The notes under the pieces are model-generated. The model was given only the letters and a program-made list of their open reading frames with translations. It was not told where the DNA came from and did no database searches. Shown here in pieces: positions 12,738-19,615 of a DNA stretch of 64,000 nucleotides. The stretch is from Thecamonas trahens ATCC 50062 (taxonomy: Eukaryota > Protista > Apusomonadida): contig NW_013657678.1 of NCBI RefSeq assembly GCF_000142905.1, positions 496,001-560,000 of the forward strand, written 5' to 3'. Each line of letters starts with the position of its first letter. Positions within the stretch are counted from its first letter, which is position 1. The translations under genes and the position numbers were made by a program.

Positions 12738-15104
12738 TCAAGTTGTCCCATAGAGCGCCAGCTGAGCAGCAGCGGTCGGGTACGACGAGAATGAGACGTC
12801 AGTCTTGCCCTCGGCATGGTCGAGGGCGGCACCGACGGTAGAAAAGAGCGACGAGCCGCCGATGCGGGCAATGAGGTTGGTGGCCACCAGCTGGATCTTG
12901 CAATGGTCGTTGAGACCGACCAGGTAGAGCGCCACACCGCGGAGGCGGTAGTTGTCGACCAACGACTTGAGGCCTGCCAGTGCTGCAGCGTCAAAGTGGT
13001 GGACGGCGGCGACAACAAGGATGACGGCCCGGAGCTTGGGCAGAACAGTGTGCAGCTCGTCGCGCTGCGACGGATGGGCGTCGACCGAGCCGAGGTGCTC
13101 GATCTTGTCCAGGATTGCCACCAGCTGGCCGATGTTGGCAAAGTTGAGCTGTGACTCGTCCACTCGGAGCACAAGCGTGTCGGCCGGAGGAACAGCCGAC
13201 GGAAACTGGTTGATGTCGACAAAGGTCCGCTGGATAGAGCCCGGCGCGTGTGGCGAGTTCTCGGAGAGCAGGAGCTCGCCAAGAATAGCAAAGTGCGGGA
13301 ATGAAGAGGCCCGAATGACAAGCAAGAGCGAGAGCGCGATGGAGACTAGCAGGCCAGCCTCGACGCCCCACACCACCGTGATGACCAGCGCCATACCTAC
13401 AAGCGCGAGCTCGGACATGGCCCGCAGCGAGTAGAGAAAGACAACCTCGGGGCCCTCGAACAGCAGCAGCGCGGCACGGAGGATAAAGGCAGCAATGACG
13501 CCGATCGGCAGGTGGTAAAGCGTCGGGGTGAGCCAGAGCAGCGTTGCAAACGAGAGCAGCGCCACCGTGGCTCCGGTGGCCTGGGTCCGCGCCCCGGTGG
13601 ACGCCTGCAGCGACGATCGCGACGACTCGCCAAAGACTGGGAAAGCGCCAAAGATGGCGCCGGCGACATTGGCCAGCCCCAGCGCCACAAGCTCGCGGTT
13701 GCCGGAGAGCCGCGGCGTGTTGGCCGTCGCCCGCGCAGGATACGCTTTGGCCACCGAAATCGAATACACATAGCCGATGATGGCGATGGCGGTCCCGGAC
13801 TGGACTGCGGGCCCGAGAAGCTCCCACGTCGGCAGCCGAGCCGACGGCAGCCCCGAAGAGGTGTGGCCCACAACAGCCACGCCGTGCTTGTCGAGCTCAC
13901 CCCACCGCGAGACAAGGAGCATGACAACAAGAACCACAAGAAACTCGGGGAAGAGCAGGACCCAAGTCCGGGCCCGCGACACCGGCCACTGCCGCACCAC
14001 ACGCTGCTTGAGCCAGTACGTGGCGACAAGAAAGACCAGCGACGAGAGCGAGCACGCGATGGCGAGACCCGACGCCTCGCCAAAGTGGGTGAACACGTAT
14101 CCTATCTTGCGGATCGACGCGTAGTCAGACACGTGTGCCTGCTGCGGGAGCCCAAACAGTGCGTCGAGCTGGTCACACACCAGCACAATGGCAACGCCGA
14201 GGCGGTAGCCCACCAGAATGCTCGACGAGAGCACGTTTTCCAGAAACCCGAACCGAACAAGCCCAAGAAGCATGCACACAACGCCCACCACCAGCGTCAG
14301 TGCCGCTGCCGCAGCTTCGGGTGCCACCCCGGCCCCTGCTCGCTTGACATATGATCCCACGAGGAGCGCAACCAGCGCGTCCGGGCCCACCGAGAGTTGC
14401 GGCGAACTGCCAAACACCACATAGACAAGGAGCGGGACACCGGCAGCATACAGGCCATACACAGGATGCAGTCCCGCGAGCGTGGCGTACGAAAGTGAGT
14501 GTGGGAGGAGCATGGCGGCCACAGCGGCGCCGGCAAGCACGTCCCACAGCAGGAAGCTCGGCGAGTACACCGGGAGCCAGTGGACGATCGGCACATAGTA
14601 TGAAATCCACTTGAGCACCCCAGCTTCCCGCACCATCTGTGCCCGGCGGCTTCGTGTTCGCCCACCAAGCAGAGGCGCGTGGGCAGCATCATGCGTGTCG
14701 ACCTTTGCACCGGTCCACTCGAACGGCTTTGCGCCGGCTTCACAGGATCCGCCCTCGTGCAGCGACGGCGTCAACCTTGGCGACGATGCCGATGTTGTGG
14801 ATGAAGAAGATGCGGATGCCGATGGTGATGATGACGCCGACGCCGACGCCGACGCCGATGGTTGTGGCGAGCAATGTGGCGGCGAGAGGACGCCAGCATT
14901 GCGCGGCAAGGATGCAGAGATGGCCGATCCCGGAACAGACGTCGCCGCCAAGGGCGACTGGAGGTACCCATCACCATACCCATATTGGCCGCCATGTAAT
15001 GATACCGTCCGCTCCGGAGTCCTCCTCTGCAACGATCGGTGGTACGACGCAAGTCGGTCCTTGATGATGGCCGACGCCGTCCGAGACGGCGCAGTCGACG
15101 ACAT
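12738..15104 (-). CDS. SLC26/SulP anion transporter with STAS domain
   Basis: DVLAGAAVAAMLLPHSLSYATLAGLHPVYGLY, FGSSPQLSVGP, NRELVALGLAN, SSRS; STAS (LNFAN...HFDAAAL). Confidence 0.95.
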   Translation of the reverse strand: MSSTAPSRTASAIIKDRLASYHRSLQRRTPERTVSLHGGQYGYGDGYLQSPLAATSVPGSAISASLPRNAGVLSPPHCSPQPSASASASASSSPSASASSSSTTSASSPRLTPSLHEGGSCEAGAKPFEWTGAKVDTHDAAHAPLLGGRTRSRRAQMVREAGVLKWISYYVPIVHWLPVYSPSFLLWDVLAGAAVAAMLLPHSLSYATLAGLHPVYGLYAAGVPLLVYVVFGSSPQLSVGPDALVALLVGSYVKRAGAGVAPEAAAAALTLVVGVVCMLLGLVRFGFLENVLSSSILVGYRLGVAIVLVCDQLDALFGLPQQAHVSDYASIRKIGYVFTHFGEASGLAIACSLSSLVFLVATYWLKQRVVRQWPVSRARTWVLLFPEFLVVLVVMLLVSRWGELDKHGVAVVGHTSSGLPSARLPTWELLGPAVQSGTAIAIIGYVYSISVAKAYPARATANTPRLSGNRELVALGLANVAGAIFGAFPVFGESSRSSLQASTGARTQATGATVALLSFATLLWLTPTLYHLPIGVIAAFILRAALLLFEGPEVVFLYSLRAMSELALVGMALVITVVWGVEAGLLVSIALSLLLVIRASSFPHFAILGELLLSENSPHAPGSIQRTFVDINQFPSAVPPADTLVLRVDESQLNFANIGQLVAILDKIEHLGSVDAHPSQRDELHTVLPKLRAVILVVAAVHHFDAAALAGLKSLVDNYRLRGVALYLVGLNDHCKIQLVATNLIARIGGSSLFSTVGAALDHAEGKTDVSFSSYPTAAAQLALYGTT

Positions 15105-15373
15105 GGCAGCCGCAGCCAAGGACGTCTACTAGAGCCGGGAAGAGGTAGCACCGGTAGCACCGGCGGAGAAAAAGCAAGACGAGTGGAAGACGGAAGAGTG
15201 GTGCGAGGGTGAGGGTGAGGGCGAGGGCGAGTGCGGTGTGTGAGCTGGTTGCGCTTGGTCGGCTACCTGACCCGGTGTGGTGGCCACCGCCATGACCTGG
15301 CGATTCGATAAGGGAATGTGCGGCCTGAGTATTGGGTTTGGGGCAATGATGGGGAGATGGAGTGATGGTGTAG

Positions 15374-18300
15374 TCACGAGCTTTTACTGGGCAAGCTCGG
15401 CCTCACGGGCGGCGCGGTTCGACGCGGCGACAGCGGCGATGCGATCCCACCTCGCGGCGCGTGCGCGTTCGTCCTTCTTGCGCGACTTTCGGTTTTGGCA
15501 TAGTCCTGCAGAGCAGTGGCAAAGGCCATCTTGTCGAGCTCCATGATGGCTTGCAGGCGGTCGTAGGTGAGCGAGTTGATGTAGCGGTCCCAGTGCGAGC
15601 GCGAGTTGCGGTAGAGCGGGCCAATGAGCGCGGGAAGAGCAGAGCGGAGGTTTGCGTTGACGACGGCCTCAAAGGCCTCTGTGCCGAGCATGTTGAGTGC
15701 ACGCTCTGCAACCTGCAGCTGCGGCGACTCGATGCAGAGTGCAACGCGCTCAAGGGCGGCGGCCCGGGTGGGCTCCGGCAGGGCAAGAGCACCGGCGGGG
15801 CCGAGCGTGTCAAAGACTGCACCAACCTGACGGAGGAACAGCTCCTCCTTGGCAGCCGAGGTGCGGGCCAGAACTTGACCAGAAAGCTGAGCAGGGCGTT
15901 GGGCATACCCGCCAGCGGAAGGACGGCATCGTTGACTAGATCCAGCAGGGGATCGATAAACCGGATGAGCTGGGCCGACTTGAAGAGGGCAAAGACAACC
16001 GAGGAGATGTAGTGGACACCGTCAGGCGCGGGTGGATTGCCAAAGTGAGCGAGCATGCCGGCCTCGTGGACGAGCTTAATGAGCTCGCCCGGACCTGCGT
16101 GGAGCTCGTTCTCGTACACAAACGTGAGGATGACGTGGGCTATCGAGTCGCGGAGGAACCGCTGAAGGTAGGTACATGTCGAGTAGACAACAACGAGAAC
16201 GTCCTTGACCGCGTTGCGCTCGTCGGCGTCGTAAGAGTTGAGGAGGTCGAGAAGCTCTGCGACAAAGTCGCGCGTGATGTACTCCTTGGCAAGGGTGACC
16301 GAGAACGACGGGTGCTTGAGGAACGACTTGAAGATGTGGTAAACAACCTCAACGTGCGGCCACGACTTGAGGAGGGCCGGCTCCGGCTCGTCAGTAAAGT
16401 CAAAGTCTGCGGCATGGAGCTCGGTGACAAGGCCCGGTGGGCGCGGGCGCTCAAAGAGGAGGTTTGCGCGGAGGAGCGAGAGGAGGACGGGGTACTCCAT
16501 TTCGTCGATGGCGACGTCGGTGCCTGTGCCGTAGACCTCTGCCAAGGTGAGGAGCGCACGCTGCTTGTGGGCCTTGCCCTGTGGGTCGGCCTGCGGATCC
16601 TCAAAGTCGAAGAGGACGTAGCACTGGCGCATGAGCGAGATAACCTCGTCGCGCTTGGACTTGAGTGCGGTGGCAAGCTGGGAGCCCGAGGGTGAGATGG
16701 CAGCGAGCGAGAGTGCGCCTTCGGGCATACCGTCTGCGTCGTCTGCGGTACCGGACTTTGCCTTGAGGAAGAGGGTACCTGCACGGCGGGAAATCTTCTC
16801 CATCCAGTTGTGTGGCTTCTTGGGCTCGCCGCCGACAATGGAGGCCCACTGCTGGTCCTTGCGGAGACGCTCCTGGCCGAGGAGAACAAATTCCTCCTTG
16901 ATCATGGGGTACTTGGAGAGGACCGAGTCCATGACCTTCTTGGTGAGGACGGAGAGGTCGACTTCGGTGCGCGCGACGACCGAGGCGGTCCGCTTGCCCT
17001 CAATAAACATGGCGATTTCGCCGAAAAAGTCGCCAGCGCCGAGGGTAACGTTCTCGCGCTTTGCCGAGCCGTCGGCAGGGGCGTCGAACTCGATGTCGAC
17101 GACACCGCGGGCAATGAAAAACATGGACGAGCCGCGCTCGCCGCGGCGGACAATGTAGTCACCGCCCTCGTAGTGCTGGGTGATCATCGAGCCAAGGACT
17201 TCCTTAAGAAACTTGGGAATGTCGTACTGGTCAATGCCGCGCGCGACGTTGATGGAGAACCACTTGCGCTTGTGGGCCTTCATCTTGCGGCGGTGGGTGG
17301 TGTTCTTGTTCTGCTCGACGTCCCACTCTTCAAACTGGCGATGGAGAGCGCCCATGCGGAGCTTGCGGCGCTGCTCGTGAATGTCTGCTGTTGATACCGA
17401 GGCAGCGACGAGGGCGTCGCCCGAAGCGGTGGCAGAGCCGGCTTCAGCGTGTGATCGGACTGATCCAGCATTCGGGCCGGCGCGCGGACGGGATGCGCCT
17501 GACGGGGAGCTGGACGGCGAAGCCATGTTCTCGACGGCGTGGGCGACGGACTTCATCCACGCCGGCGTGGCATGGGCGGCAGAGCCCTGGCCGTCGAGAT
17601 CGGCCTGCAGCCTGTTCTGGGCGAGCATTAGGAACTCGTGATGGATGAGCGGATACTGGAAGAGGACGGCCTCGCACATGTCCTTAGTGAGGACACAGAC
17701 GTCGACGTCTGTGGCGGCACGGACTGAGGCTGTCCGCTTGCGCTCGAGAAACATGGCGATCTCGCCGAAAAAGTCGCCCGAGGCACAGGTCGGGTTTGGG
17801 CGCTGCTCACCCTCAGCGCGGTCGGGAAGAATGATCTCAACAGTGCCAGCGATGATGAAGAACATGGCCGAGCCGACGTCGCCACGGCGAACAATGAGGT
17901 CGCCCTCTTGGTAGTGGACAATGTCCATGGACGAGAGCATGGTCTCGACAAAGTCGGACGAGGTGGTCGTGGACAGCGACCGCACCATGCGCCGCGACTC
18001 GTCCGAAACGTCGCCGCCGGACGAGCCAGGCGCGGCGTTGCCTGCAGCGGCGGCGGTGACCTCACGGCGGATCTTGTGCAGCGATCGGCGCTTGAGGATG
18101 AGGGCCTGCTCGTGGGTGAGGAGGGCGCCGGTCTCGGGATCGCGCATGGCAAGCGAGGTGTCTGTGGCAGCATGCAGGAGCGAGCCACCGTGAGCGTCGG
18201 GCTCACCGGCGCTACCGGTGGCGAGCGGGGTGAGCTCGGTGCCCTTGCCCATGAGGCGGCCAATGGCGCGGGCGGCCTCACGCTCGGCCTCGGTCACCTC

Positions 18301-18883
18301 TTGCTCGTCGAGAAGCTCGAGCGAGTGGAGGCGGGTGAGGACATAGTTGCGGTAGATGTTGTAGTCTGCGTCAGTCTTGTCAACCTGGTAGCGCGGGTGC
18401 GGACAGCACGGGTTCATCCGCGAGTCGAGTGTCTTGAGCGCAGGCGTCTTGGAGCTGAGAAGCGTCACCATCTCGTGCACGTCGCCGAGCGCGTTGCGCG
18501 ACAGGTCCAGATCCGTCAGCCGGAGCAGGTTCGGAAAGGCGACAAGCGTGTCCAGTGCATTGTCGGCAAGTGCCAGGCCTGTCAGACGCGGAAAGTCTTG
18601 CAAATGCTCAAGCGAGCTGACGTCGAGGAGACCCTGTGGGGATGGCGGTGCGCGGGTGAGTTGCGGGACGAGGCGGGGGAGGGGGAAGAGGACGAGGGAA
18701 GAAGAAAGGAAGCGAACGTACACAGGAAGATAGATCGACAAACGAGGTTGTCTGCGAGTACTTTTCCACAATTGATGGAGGGATGGCAGTGACGCCAGCG
18801 ACTCGAAGCCGAGAGCCGTCAAACTCGTACCGAGGTGTCAAGCTCCCATCGACAGCTTGCATCTGTAGTGATGAGATTGCCAT
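15374..18883 (-). CDS. LRMDA-like LRR + two cNMP-binding domains + PP2A B56 domain fusion, ~1140 aa; intron 18634-18721, 1-nt frameshift at 15865-15867
   Basis: LRR/LRRcap (NPCCP...DYNIYRNYVLTRLHSLELLDEQEVTEAERE). Two cNMP folds (GDFFGEIAMF...KRTASV). B56 motifs (CYVLFDF, SWPHVEVVY, LLDLLNSYDADER, FWPRTSAAKEELFL, QVAERAL, SHWDRYI). One added C joins ORF 15403-18822 to the frame of ORF 15374-15691. Confidence 0.85.
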
Positions 18884-18937
18884 GTAATAGTTGAGTTCGG
18901 CGATCGACGATTAATGATAGGTGCAAGTGTGATGTCG

Positions 18938-18961
18938 ACGATGACGATGACAATGATGACA

Positions 18962-18999
<38 letters not shown>
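18938..18999. repeat. (GAT)n trinucleotide microsatellite
   Basis: Seen directly. Confidence 0.9.
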
Positions 19000-19615
19000 C
19001 AGAAGAGCATGTTGACGGTTGGGGTTGACGAGAAGAGTTGAAGTGGAGGGGGGGGGGAGGGGGGGTGCATGTAAGGGCAAAGCAGAGTGAGTCGCCGTCG
19101 TTGTGGTGAGTTGGCGTGGTGGTGGTGGCGGTGGTGGTGGTAGTGTGGTAGAGGTAGTAAGGGTGGCTGTGGATGGTGGTGGTGGTGGTGGGGAGGGGAG
19201 CGGAAGAGGGTGGCGGTTGGTATGAGGGAGAAGGACAGGGGAGGGGGGGGGGTGGGAAAGGCCGCAGTTGGCTCAGGAAAAGGGCGTAGATGGGAAAGTT
19301 AGAAAGGGACGTACTACGGCTCCGTCACTGCCTGGAACCACGCCACTGTTACCTCCAGCAGCCTTGGAACAGCACCCTCCCATGGTGCTCTACTCCAACT
19401 GGCTCACAGTGCGGTGACCCTTGGCCTTCCTCTCGTCGTCCGGTCCGGGCTGTCTCCCGCTGTTGTTGGCCGGGAAACGTTCGTTGAACGAACGAACACC
19501 CATCATTTGTCGCTCGTCTCTCTACCTCGTACATATCATGGATAACGTCATGGGCGGGCACGGATGACTACAGGAGTACACAGCAAATAGGTATCATTTG
19601 CTTGAGGGTGGGGAA

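What the first reader, a model, noticed from the sequence alone, without database searches (positions are those of the whole stretch)
15374..18883. PP2A B56 subunit fused to two cyclic-nucleotide-binding domains and an LRMDA-type LRR
Seen: LRR-LRRcap, two cNMP domains with complete phosphate-binding cassettes (FGEIAMFLERKRTASV, FGEIAMFIEGKRTASV) and a full B56 domain after repair. Established: B56 targets PP2A to substrates; in animals cAMP control is indirect, through PKA phosphorylation; RTA cassettes occur in PKG and CNG/HCN channels. Inference: a phosphatase holoenzyme gated directly by cAMP/cGMP, a phosphatase counterpart of PKA/PKG. The B56 domain is divergent and may have altered substrate specificity.
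Basis: partly seen in the sequence, partly recalled or inferred. Interest (0 to 1): 0.85.

Follow-up and report, generated by a model that had tools for sequence, protein, structure and literature searches.

The report
Cyclic-nucleotide-sensing B56-type phosphatase subunit
A gene of the marine flagellate Thecamonas trahens joins two intact-looking cAMP/cGMP-binding domains and a leucine-rich-repeat module to a divergent copy of the B56 targeting subunit of protein phosphatase 2A. This suggests, but does not show, a phosphatase controlled directly by a cyclic nucleotide.

Summary
On the minus strand, one unbroken reading frame of 925 codons (18633-15859) carries an LRR plus cap, two cNMP-binding domains and the first two thirds of a B56 domain. 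The rest of B56 follows after two single-base frame breaks.

NCBI already lists the protein from Thecamonas trahens ATCC 50062 as 'serine/threonine protein phosphatase 2A', from a gene model that dodges both breaks. A Tara Oceans contig encodes a 71% identical ortholog with the same domain order in one unbroken 1196-codon frame. All segments are under purifying selection (dN/dS 0.1-0.45). The fusion is therefore genuine and the breaks are most likely assembly errors.

An exhaustive search of 1.84 billion representative proteins found no other protein with both domain types, and no paper describes one.

Both phosphate-binding cassettes keep the ligand-contact residues, and both domains fold confidently. 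The B56 part spans the whole family profile, but the four residues shown by mutagenesis to hold LxxIxE substrates are all replaced, identically or similarly in both orthologs. The canonical B56 paralog of the same genome keeps them.

The best description is a new variant of a known kind, with an inferred mechanism.

The parts
19315..19383 (-). Putative exon 1 of 23 codons. It begins Met-Gly and has Cys at positions 4 and 5 and Ser at 6, an N-myristoylation/palmitoylation-type motif.
   Evidence: Present in NCBI model P0001. The sequence has a Kozak-like ATG and GTACGT directly after codon 23. No RNA support could be obtained.
18863..19314 (-). Putative intron 1 (452 nt, GTACGT at its start, CAG at its end).
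   Evidence: The Tara ortholog also has a pyrimidine tract plus CAG directly before its first ATG.
18722..18862 (-). Exon 2 (47 codons): N-terminal region and first LRR strand.
   Evidence: Aligns to P0001 and P0002.
18634..18721 (-). Intron 2 (88 nt, GTACGT at its start, CAG at its end). Removing it joins the two reading frames.
   Evidence: NCBI model P0001 uses the same junction.
15384..18633 (-). Exon 3, running to the probable stop codon (15386-15384), with two single-base frame breaks.
18259..18633 (-). Leucine-rich repeats plus C-terminal cap.
   Evidence: Pfam LRR_8 and LRR_9 score below cut-off; in the ortholog LRR_4 scores 6.7e-6. A PDB profile search gives E 4.7e-14 to Roco LRRs. 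Hits that extend through the cap are LRRC72 (1e-6) and dynein light chain 1 (1.2e-5).
18061..18117 (-). Conserved basic helix containing a Lys-Arg-Arg-Ser-Leu basophilic-kinase-type site, about 40 residues upstream of CNB-A.
   Evidence: Only one of these 19 positions differs between the two orthologs. Its function is inferred only.
17596..17976 (-). Cyclic-nucleotide-binding domain A (Pfam core 17656-17919; phosphate-binding cassette 17722-17769).
   Evidence: AF2 pLDDT is about 90. Foldseek matches PKG and PKA-R with probability 1.0. dN/dS is 0.13.
17299..17514 (-). Disordered part of the linker between the two CNB domains.
   Evidence: AF2 pLDDT is below 50 for residues 160-231 of the folded stretch.
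16837..17220 (-). Cyclic-nucleotide-binding domain B (Pfam core 16909-17178; phosphate-binding cassette 16978-17025).
   Evidence: dN/dS is 0.11.
16660..16836 (-). Strongly conserved connector from the CNB-B C-helix into B56.
   Evidence: Its first roughly 45 residues differ at only two positions between the orthologs. dN/dS is 0.20.
15470..16659 (-). B56 domain (Pfam profile 11-398), split by frame break 1.
   Evidence: The ortholog covers profile 14-410 at E 2e-78. PDB hits: B56 delta at 2.3e-61 and B56 gamma1 at 9e-60.
16018..16203 (-). Remodelled LxxIxE groove. The positions equivalent to human B56 gamma1 H187, R188, R197, K240 and H243 read V, V, Q, A and G.
   Evidence: Residue roles come from PMC4930772.
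15856..15866 (-). Frame break 1: one base missing next to a CCC run.
   Evidence: The ortholog reads straight through with Trp-Pro-Lys-Thr-Ser. The codon-position GC pattern switches frame here.
15497..15512 (-). Probable frame break 2: one base missing in an A run.
   Evidence: The codon-position GC pattern switches frame. There is a short Arg-Ala-x-Arg-Trp match to the ortholog tail (E 1.7), and the unshifted frame has no match.

Best explanation
This is one expressed-type gene of Thecamonas trahens, of about 1150 codons. Its order is: a possible N-terminal acylation signal, LRR plus cap, a basic helix, CNB-A, a roughly 100-residue linker, CNB-B, a conserved connector, and a B56 domain.

Shown:
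- The architecture is real.
- It is conserved and under purifying selection in a second species.
- The ligand-contact residues of both CNB domains are intact.
- The B56 fold family is covered over its full length.
- The LxxIxE groove is replaced by a different surface that is conserved between the two orthologs.

Inferred:
- The B56 part still docks on the PR65 scaffold and a PP2A-type catalytic subunit.
- cAMP or cGMP binding moves the CNB-B C-helix and connector, and so changes access to the active site or to the remodelled groove. This would achieve directly what PKA phosphorylation of the B56 delta arms achieves indirectly in animals.
- The LRR, and the lipid anchor if it exists, supply targeting.
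- The two frame breaks are assembly errors.
For: - Domains.
- One 925-codon frame spans LRR to B56.
- The ortholog P0002 has an unbroken 1196-codon frame on an independent Tara contig.
- dN/dS is 0.11-0.44 in every segment, and 0.24 after break 1.
- CNB folds have pLDDT about 90 and match PKG and PKA-R. The cassettes keep Gly-Glu and Arg-Thr-Ala.
- B56 aligns end to end with human B56 delta and gamma. The acidic loop and the Trp-Pro-His motif are partly kept.
- The genome has a canonical PR65 scaffold that keeps the B56-contact ridge residues listed in PMC1945078.
- It has a PP2A-like catalytic subunit that aligns over its full length with human PP2A-C.
- It has 31 cyclase matches and 65 CNB matches.
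- The B56 delta precedent for cAMP control is in PMC10769853.
Against: - No RNA or read evidence was available, and no complex prediction.
- The fusion keeps only 63 of the 129 columns that are at least 80% conserved in canonical B56; the canonical paralog keeps 117.
- Of four sites whose tumour mutations abolish core binding, two are changed (PMC4986044).
- No strictly canonical PP2A-C gene was found in the assembly.
- A second, very divergent B56-like domain is fused to a kinase in the same genome. B56-like repeats may therefore be reused here as plain scaffolds.
- The two CNB domains are not a contiguous PKA-R-type tandem.
- The assembly as it stands is frame-broken.
Confidence: 0.45

Rival explanations
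1. The B56-like domain no longer binds the PP2A core. The protein is then a cyclic-nucleotide-regulated scaffold or adaptor that uses the helical-repeat domain and the LRR only for protein-protein contacts.
For: - There is heavy divergence on a stem branch of 2.5 substitutions per site.
- Half of the canonical conserved columns are lost.
- Two of four core-binding mutation sites are changed.
- A B56-like plus kinase fusion in the same genome shows the fold can be co-opted.
- No canonical PP2A-C was found.
Against: - The full B56 profile is covered at E 2e-78.
- Loss is concentrated in the substrate groove: 21 of 57 conserved columns are kept there, against 42 of 72 elsewhere.
- The acidic loop that faces the catalytic subunit is recognisable.
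- The scaffold subunit is canonical.
Confidence: 0.3
2. The Thecamonas copy is a recently inactivated pseudogene, and the two frame breaks are real.
For: There are two frame breaks within the last 500 bases of the assembly sequence.
Against: - Coding-type codon-position GC pattern and purifying selection continue after the breaks.
- Both breaks are one missing base in short homopolymers.
- Earlier notes of this scan report same-direction single-base breaks in other otherwise intact genes of this assembly.
- The ortholog is intact.
Confidence: 0.1
3. The frame breaks are biological recoding, by +1 frameshifting or insertional editing, rather than errors or decay.
For: An earlier first-stage note lists six same-direction single-base breaks in three other genes of this genome. 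Both breaks here have the same direction.
Against: The two sites share no sequence motif. The ortholog needs no recoding at either site. Nothing else points to recoding.
Confidence: 0.05
4. The module behaves like a kinase regulatory subunit. The conserved basic Lys-Arg-Arg-Ser-Leu site upstream of CNB-A docks a PKA- or PKG-type catalytic subunit, so the protein couples a kinase and a phosphatase under one cyclic-nucleotide switch.
For: A nearly invariant basic helix lies about 40 residues before CNB-A. That is roughly where PKA-R and PKG carry their inhibitor sites (my own knowledge). The nearest folds are PKG and PKA-R.
Against: The Ser has Lys, not Arg, at position -3. The spacing is longer than in R subunits. 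The CNB domains are separated by a long disordered linker. No binding was tested.
Confidence: 0.1

Closest known systems
Human PP2A B56 delta (PPP2R5D) holoenzyme, PDB 8U1X
   Same: It has the same B56 core family (E 2.3e-61, aligned end to end). Its phosphatase output is placed under cAMP control. In B56 delta, extensions flanking the core occlude the active site and the substrate groove until they are released (PMC10769853).
   Different: In B56 delta the cAMP signal arrives through PKA phosphorylation of disordered arms. Here two cyclic-nucleotide-binding domains are built into the subunit itself. The LxxIxE groove is kept in B56 delta and remodelled here.
Canonical B56 of Thecamonas trahens (contig 8; locus L002)
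   Same: It is the probable parent by duplication: the fusion pair is its sister in the tree (SH-aLRT 84).
   Different: The canonical copy scores 573 bits and keeps 117 of 129 conserved columns and all groove residues. It has no CNB or LRR module.
Regulatory modules of PKG I and PKA R subunits (PDB 4Z07, 3SHR, 1RGS)
   Same: Both have two CNB domains, and these are the nearest sequence and fold neighbours. Both have Arg-Thr-Ala or Arg-Ala-Ala type cassettes and a basic site upstream of the first CNB domain.
   Different: The output domain here is a phosphatase-targeting subunit, not a kinase. The two CNB domains are separated by about 100 residues, 70 of them disordered, instead of being contiguous. 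An LRR stands in place of the dimerisation/docking domain.
Plant PP2C-CNB-kinase proteins (Arabidopsis At2g20050 type); recalled from memory, not found in the library
   Same: A phosphatase function and a cyclic-nucleotide-binding domain sit in one polypeptide.
   Different: Those proteins carry a PP2C catalytic domain and a kinase domain. This one carries a non-catalytic PP2A targeting subunit.
Multi-CNB F-box/LRR proteins of protists (P0054, P0057, P0066, P0070)
   Same: They are the closest CNB sequences in the exhaustive search. They also join CNB sensors to a non-kinase effector and to LRRs.
   Different: They have three to seven CNB domains and an F-box effector, and no B56.

Membership tests
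PP2A B56 (B'/PR61) regulatory subunit, Pfam PF01603 | Match to the family profile above the curated cut-off and over its full length. | tested here: met
   The window pieces score 155.7 and 78.1 bits (cut-off 25) and cover profile 11-398. The ortholog scores 264.6 bits over 14-410 of 413.
PP2A B56 (B'/PR61) regulatory subunit, Pfam PF01603 | LxxIxE-binding groove (gamma1 H187, R197, K240, H243; also R188, T184, E226, S230). | tested here: not met
   These positions read V, Q, A/S, G and V, D, K/Q, G in both orthologs. They are invariant or nearly so in 42 canonical representatives and in the Thecamonas canonical paralog. Residue roles come from PMC4930772.
PP2A B56 (B'/PR61) regulatory subunit, Pfam PF01603 | Binds the PR65 scaffold and the PP2A catalytic subunit. 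| not testable with these tools
The proxy sites are mixed: C49 and L267 are kept, E174 and Q266 are changed.
PP2A B56 (B'/PR61) regulatory subunit, Pfam PF01603 | The partner subunits exist in the organism. | tested here: inconclusive
   A canonical PR65 is present on contig 29. There are only three PP2A-subfamily catalytic genes: PP4-like, PP6-like, and P0194, which scores 400 bits to human PP2A-C. The canonical PP2A-C motif was not found.
Cyclic-nucleotide-binding domain, Pfam PF00027 | Profile match and beta-barrel fold. | tested here: met
   There are two domains, 118.4 bits in total (cut-off 27.5). pLDDT is about 90. Foldseek probability is 1.0 to PKG and PKA-R.
Cyclic-nucleotide-binding domain, Pfam PF00027 | Phosphate-binding cassette with Gly-Glu and Arg-(Thr/Ala)-Ala. 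| tested here: met
   Both cassettes keep these residues and are identical in the two orthologs. They align with the PKG cassette.
Cyclic-nucleotide-binding domain, Pfam PF00027 | Actual binding of cAMP or cGMP, and selectivity. | not testable with these tools
   This needs binding assays. The Arg that marks cGMP-selective PKG CNB-B is absent at the aligned position; I read this and am recalling the PKG pattern from memory.
PKA-R / PKG regulatory module | Contiguous CNB-A/CNB-B tandem preceded by an inhibitor site. | tested here: not met
   The CNB domains are separated by about 100 residues with a 72-residue disordered stretch, and pTM is 0.44. The basic site is only suggestive.
LRR with C-terminal cap (SDS22-like class: dynein LC1, LRRC72, LRMDA) | LRR units followed by a cap segment. 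| tested here: inconclusive
   All Pfam LRR families score below cut-off. The PDB profile search gives 4.7e-14 for the LRR units; only LRRC72 (1e-6) and LC1 (1.2e-5) extend through the cap. The fold prediction failed with pLDDT 37. LRMDA itself was not compared.

The most novel reading that the evidence does not exclude
This is a PP2A-type holoenzyme whose targeting subunit is itself the cAMP/cGMP receptor. Ligand binding to the built-in CNB domains would unlock a remodelled substrate groove or the active site at a membrane, possibly the flagellar membrane. That would make it a direct phosphatase counterpart of PKA and PKG. It arose in apusomonads by duplication of B56.
Probability: 0.3. Interest if true: 0.8.

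Novelty: new variant of a known kind. Interest (0 to 1): 0.6.

Why it matters
In animals, cAMP reaches PP2A-B56 only indirectly, through PKA phosphorylation of B56 delta. A B56 subunit that carries its own cyclic-nucleotide sensors would be the first second-messenger receptor built into a PP2A targeting subunit. It would work as a natural 'Rosetta stone' fusion, arguing that the link between cyclic nucleotides and B56 is old.

It would also give a compact system for studying how a ligand-driven domain movement can gate a phosphatase. The conserved replacement of the LxxIxE groove offers a natural example of how B56 substrate recognition can be rewired.

There are limits. The fusion is known from only two closely related marine protists, and nothing has been tested at the bench.

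Tried and rejected
- **Reads:** There is therefore no read or RNA evidence, and read laying was not used.
- **Complex prediction:** Complex prediction, set up with the PR65 N-terminal half plus the B56 domain and alignments A5 and A4, was unavailable.
- **LRR fold:** the prediction from a two-sequence alignment gave pLDDT 37 and was discarded.
- **Protein atlas:** busy three times.
- **Metagenome scans:** two scans with different peptide patterns found no further relatives. P0050 is only a fragment of the Tara species, and its contig is not on record.
- **Literature:** searches for the fusion, for Thecamonas cyclic-nucleotide signalling and for CNB-PP2C proteins found nothing relevant. Residue-level lists of the B56 contacts with A and C were not found in the open papers I read.
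- **Chimeric contig:** rejected, because an independent contig has the same order.
- **Intron in the Tara ortholog:** it has no canonical in-frame intron at the position of intron 2. A Pro/Ser-rich in-frame insert sits there instead.
- **Joined model:** the spliced, frame-bridged protein was never sent to a search tool. The exons and pieces were searched separately by reference. In my own scripts the pieces were joined only with X at the breaks.
- **Rejected script:** I derived the coordinates from alignment positions instead.
Full report
**What is in the sequence**

The window is GC-rich (about 62%) and carries short GT-AG introns. The best database match to the region is a protein that NCBI names 'serine/threonine protein phosphatase 2A [Thecamonas trahens ATCC 50062]' (P0001, 100% identity). 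The organism is therefore the apusomonad flagellate that earlier notes of this scan also named.

On the minus strand, one uninterrupted frame of 925 codons (18633-15859) holds three elements:
- leucine-rich repeats with a cap;
- two Pfam cNMP_binding domains (E 1.4e-34);
- B56 profile positions 11-272 (E 2.4e-45).

The next frame holds B56 positions 272-398. The fusion of sensor and B56 therefore does not depend on any repair.

**Gene model**

- Exon 2 (18862-18722) is joined to exon 3 (from 18633) by an 88-nt intron with GTACGT at its start and CAG at its end.
- NCBI's model adds a 23-codon exon 1 (19383-19315) behind a Kozak-like ATG, followed by the same GTACGT donor. It starts Met-Gly-Gly-Cys-Cys-Ser, a myristoylation/palmitoylation-type signal.
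- The Tara ortholog also has a pyrimidine tract and CAG immediately before its first ATG. This fits an upstream exon, but I have no RNA evidence for it.

There are two frame breaks.
- Break 1 is at about 15856-15866. The assembly lacks one base next to a CCC run. The ortholog reads straight through this point.
- Break 2 is at about 15497-15512, in A runs. It is supported by the switch of the codon-position GC signature, by a short tail match to the ortholog, and by the absence of any match in the unshifted frame. It is probable, not certain.

With both breaks bridged, the stop is at 15386-15384 and the protein has about 1150 residues. NCBI's model avoids break 1 with an artificial intron that deletes 15 conserved residues. 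After break 2 it runs into unrelated sequence.

**Is the gene real and alive?**

A 4033-base Tara Oceans contig (L001) encodes P0002. This protein is 71% identical, has the same domain order, and lies in one unbroken 1196-codon frame. Codon-level comparison gives these dN/dS values:

| Segment | dN/dS |
|---|---|
| CNB-A | 0.13 |
| CNB-B | 0.11 |
| B56 before break 1 | 0.16 |
| B56 after break 1 | 0.24 |
| Connector (CNB-B to B56) | 0.20 |
| Inter-CNB linker | 0.17 |
| LRR | 0.32 |
| LRR-to-CNB-A linker | 0.44 |

A chimeric contig is excluded. A pseudogene is unlikely. Both breaks are single missing bases in short homopolymers, and earlier notes report the same kind of break in other intact-looking genes of this assembly. 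I rate assembly error as by far the likeliest cause. I keep real decay and recoding as minor rivals, because reads could not be obtained.

**How widespread is it?**

An exhaustive HMMER search of 1.84 billion representative proteins returned 18,250 hits. I screened the best 150 locally, together with the word-indexed hits. Only P0001 and P0002 combine B56 with CNB domains. A protein with both would have ranked at the top, because domain scores add. Two scans of JGI metagenomes found nothing more. No paper in the library mentions such a fusion.

**The sensor**

- Both phosphate-binding cassettes keep the Gly-Glu pair and the Arg-Thr-Ala triplet, and are identical in the two species.
- The closest solved sequences are Plasmodium and human PKG, the bacterial channel SthK, and HCN channels.
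- AlphaFold models both domains at pLDDT about 90. Their fold neighbours are PKG and PKA-R.
- The two domains are separated by about 100 residues, 72 of them predicted disordered. This is not a contiguous PKA-R-type tandem.
- Ligand preference cannot be read from the sequence.
- The genome is rich in this signalling system, with at least 65 CNB matches and 31 cyclase matches.
- The nearest CNB relatives elsewhere are multi-CNB proteins, several of which are fused to F-box and LRR modules.

**The B56 part**

The ortholog's domain aligns end to end with human B56 delta and gamma (E about 1e-60). I used B56 gamma1 numbering and the residue roles given in PMC4930772.
- H187 and R197, whose mutation abolishes LxxIxE binding, read V and Q.
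- K240 and H243, whose mutation weakens it, read A/S and G.
- R188, T184, E226 and S230 also differ.

The replacements are the same or similar in both orthologs. Forty-two canonical representatives and the canonical Thecamonas B56 on contig 8 keep the original residues.

Of 129 columns that are at least 80% conserved in canonical B56, the fusion keeps 63 and the canonical paralog keeps 117. In the groove region the figures are 21 of 57 against 53 of 57. The substrate groove has therefore been rebuilt rather than simply decayed.

In a quick tree, the fusion pair sits on a very long stem as sister to the Thecamonas canonical B56 (SH-aLRT 84). This suggests a lineage-specific duplication. The long branch makes the placement uncertain.

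**Does it still build a phosphatase?**

This is the weakest link. The genome has a canonical PR65 scaffold on contig 29, 55-65% identical to those of other eukaryotes. I read the B56-contact ridge residues listed in PMC1945078 as present in its translation.

I found only three PP2A-subfamily catalytic genes: PP4-like, PP6-like, and P0194 on contig 40. P0194 aligns over its full length with human PP2A-C at 400 bits, but its nearest named relatives are PP4- and PPG1-type. Motifs specific to canonical PP2A-C were not found.

Of four B56 gamma positions whose tumour mutations abolish core binding (PMC4986044, whose numbering is offset by ten), two are kept and two are changed. The complex predictor was unavailable. 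Core binding is therefore an inference. I put it at roughly 60%.

**Most likely mechanism**

I think this is a B56-type targeting subunit that docks on PR65 and a PP2A-type catalytic subunit. The segment from the CNB-B C-helix into B56 is nearly invariant between the two species. I suggest this connector transmits cyclic-nucleotide binding to the B56 core and changes access to the active site or to the rebuilt groove. The closest precedent is B56 delta, where flanking arms cover both sites until PKA phosphorylation loosens them (PMC10769853). The LRR and the possible lipid anchor would supply localisation. The cap-bearing LRR hits are axonemal proteins, which is only a hint of a flagellar setting.

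A nearly invariant basic helix with a Lys-Arg-Arg-Ser-Leu site lies before CNB-A. This raises the more speculative idea of kinase docking.

**Verdict**

The protein record already exists in public databases under a generic name and a faulty model. However, the architecture, its restriction to two apusomonad-type organisms and the remodelled groove are undescribed in the papers searched. I class it as a new variant of a known kind, with interest 0.6.

Noticed in passing
G000 contig 46, locus L005:43-2814 (-): A 923-codon frame joins a very divergent B56-like segment (Pfam E 2.5e-24, profile 267-375 best) to a protein kinase domain (E 3.7e-36). This is a second, independent reuse of the B56 fold in this genome. 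Its branch in the B56 tree is about 4 substitutions per site.
   Followed up: partly
G000 contigs 12, 40 and 46 (loci L006/L009, L010, L007): The assembly shows only three PP2A-subfamily catalytic genes: PP4-like, P0194 (PPG1/PP4-like by its named relatives but 400 bits to human PP2A-C), and PP6-like. Motifs specific to canonical PP2A-C gave no hit. The PR65 scaffold and a canonical B56 are nevertheless present.
   Followed up: partly
window 15384-19383 versus NCBI model P0001: The public gene model skips 15 conserved B56 residues with an artificial intron at frame break 1. After frame break 2 it ends in about 60 unrelated residues taken from 14740-14874, which lies within the span of the neighbouring transporter ORF on the same strand.
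   Followed up: yes
window 12738-15119 (-): The downstream neighbour is a long ORF that looks like a SulP/SLC26-type anion transporter with a C-terminal STAS-like region. I judged this by eye from the translation and ran no search.
   Followed up: no
whole genome G000: Cyclic-nucleotide signalling is strongly expanded: at least 65 CNB-domain matches and 31 class III cyclase matches in 28.7 Mb, many of them in open frames longer than 1000 codons.
   Followed up: no
proteins P0054, P0057, P0066, P0070: The closest CNB sequences outside the orthologs are proteins with three or four CNB domains. P0054, P0057 and P0070 also carry F-box and LRR modules; P0066 carries LRRs only. They are candidate cyclic-nucleotide-regulated ubiquitin-ligase substrate receptors.
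   Followed up: no
L001:300-435: At the position of the window's 88-nt intron 2, the Tara ortholog carries a 135-nt pyrimidine-rich stretch. It stays in frame and has no canonical in-frame GT-AG pair, so the gene caller reads it as a Pro/Ser-rich insert.
   Followed up: partly
window 18920-19010 (-): A long ATC/GTC trinucleotide repeat lies inside putative intron 1.
   Followed up: no
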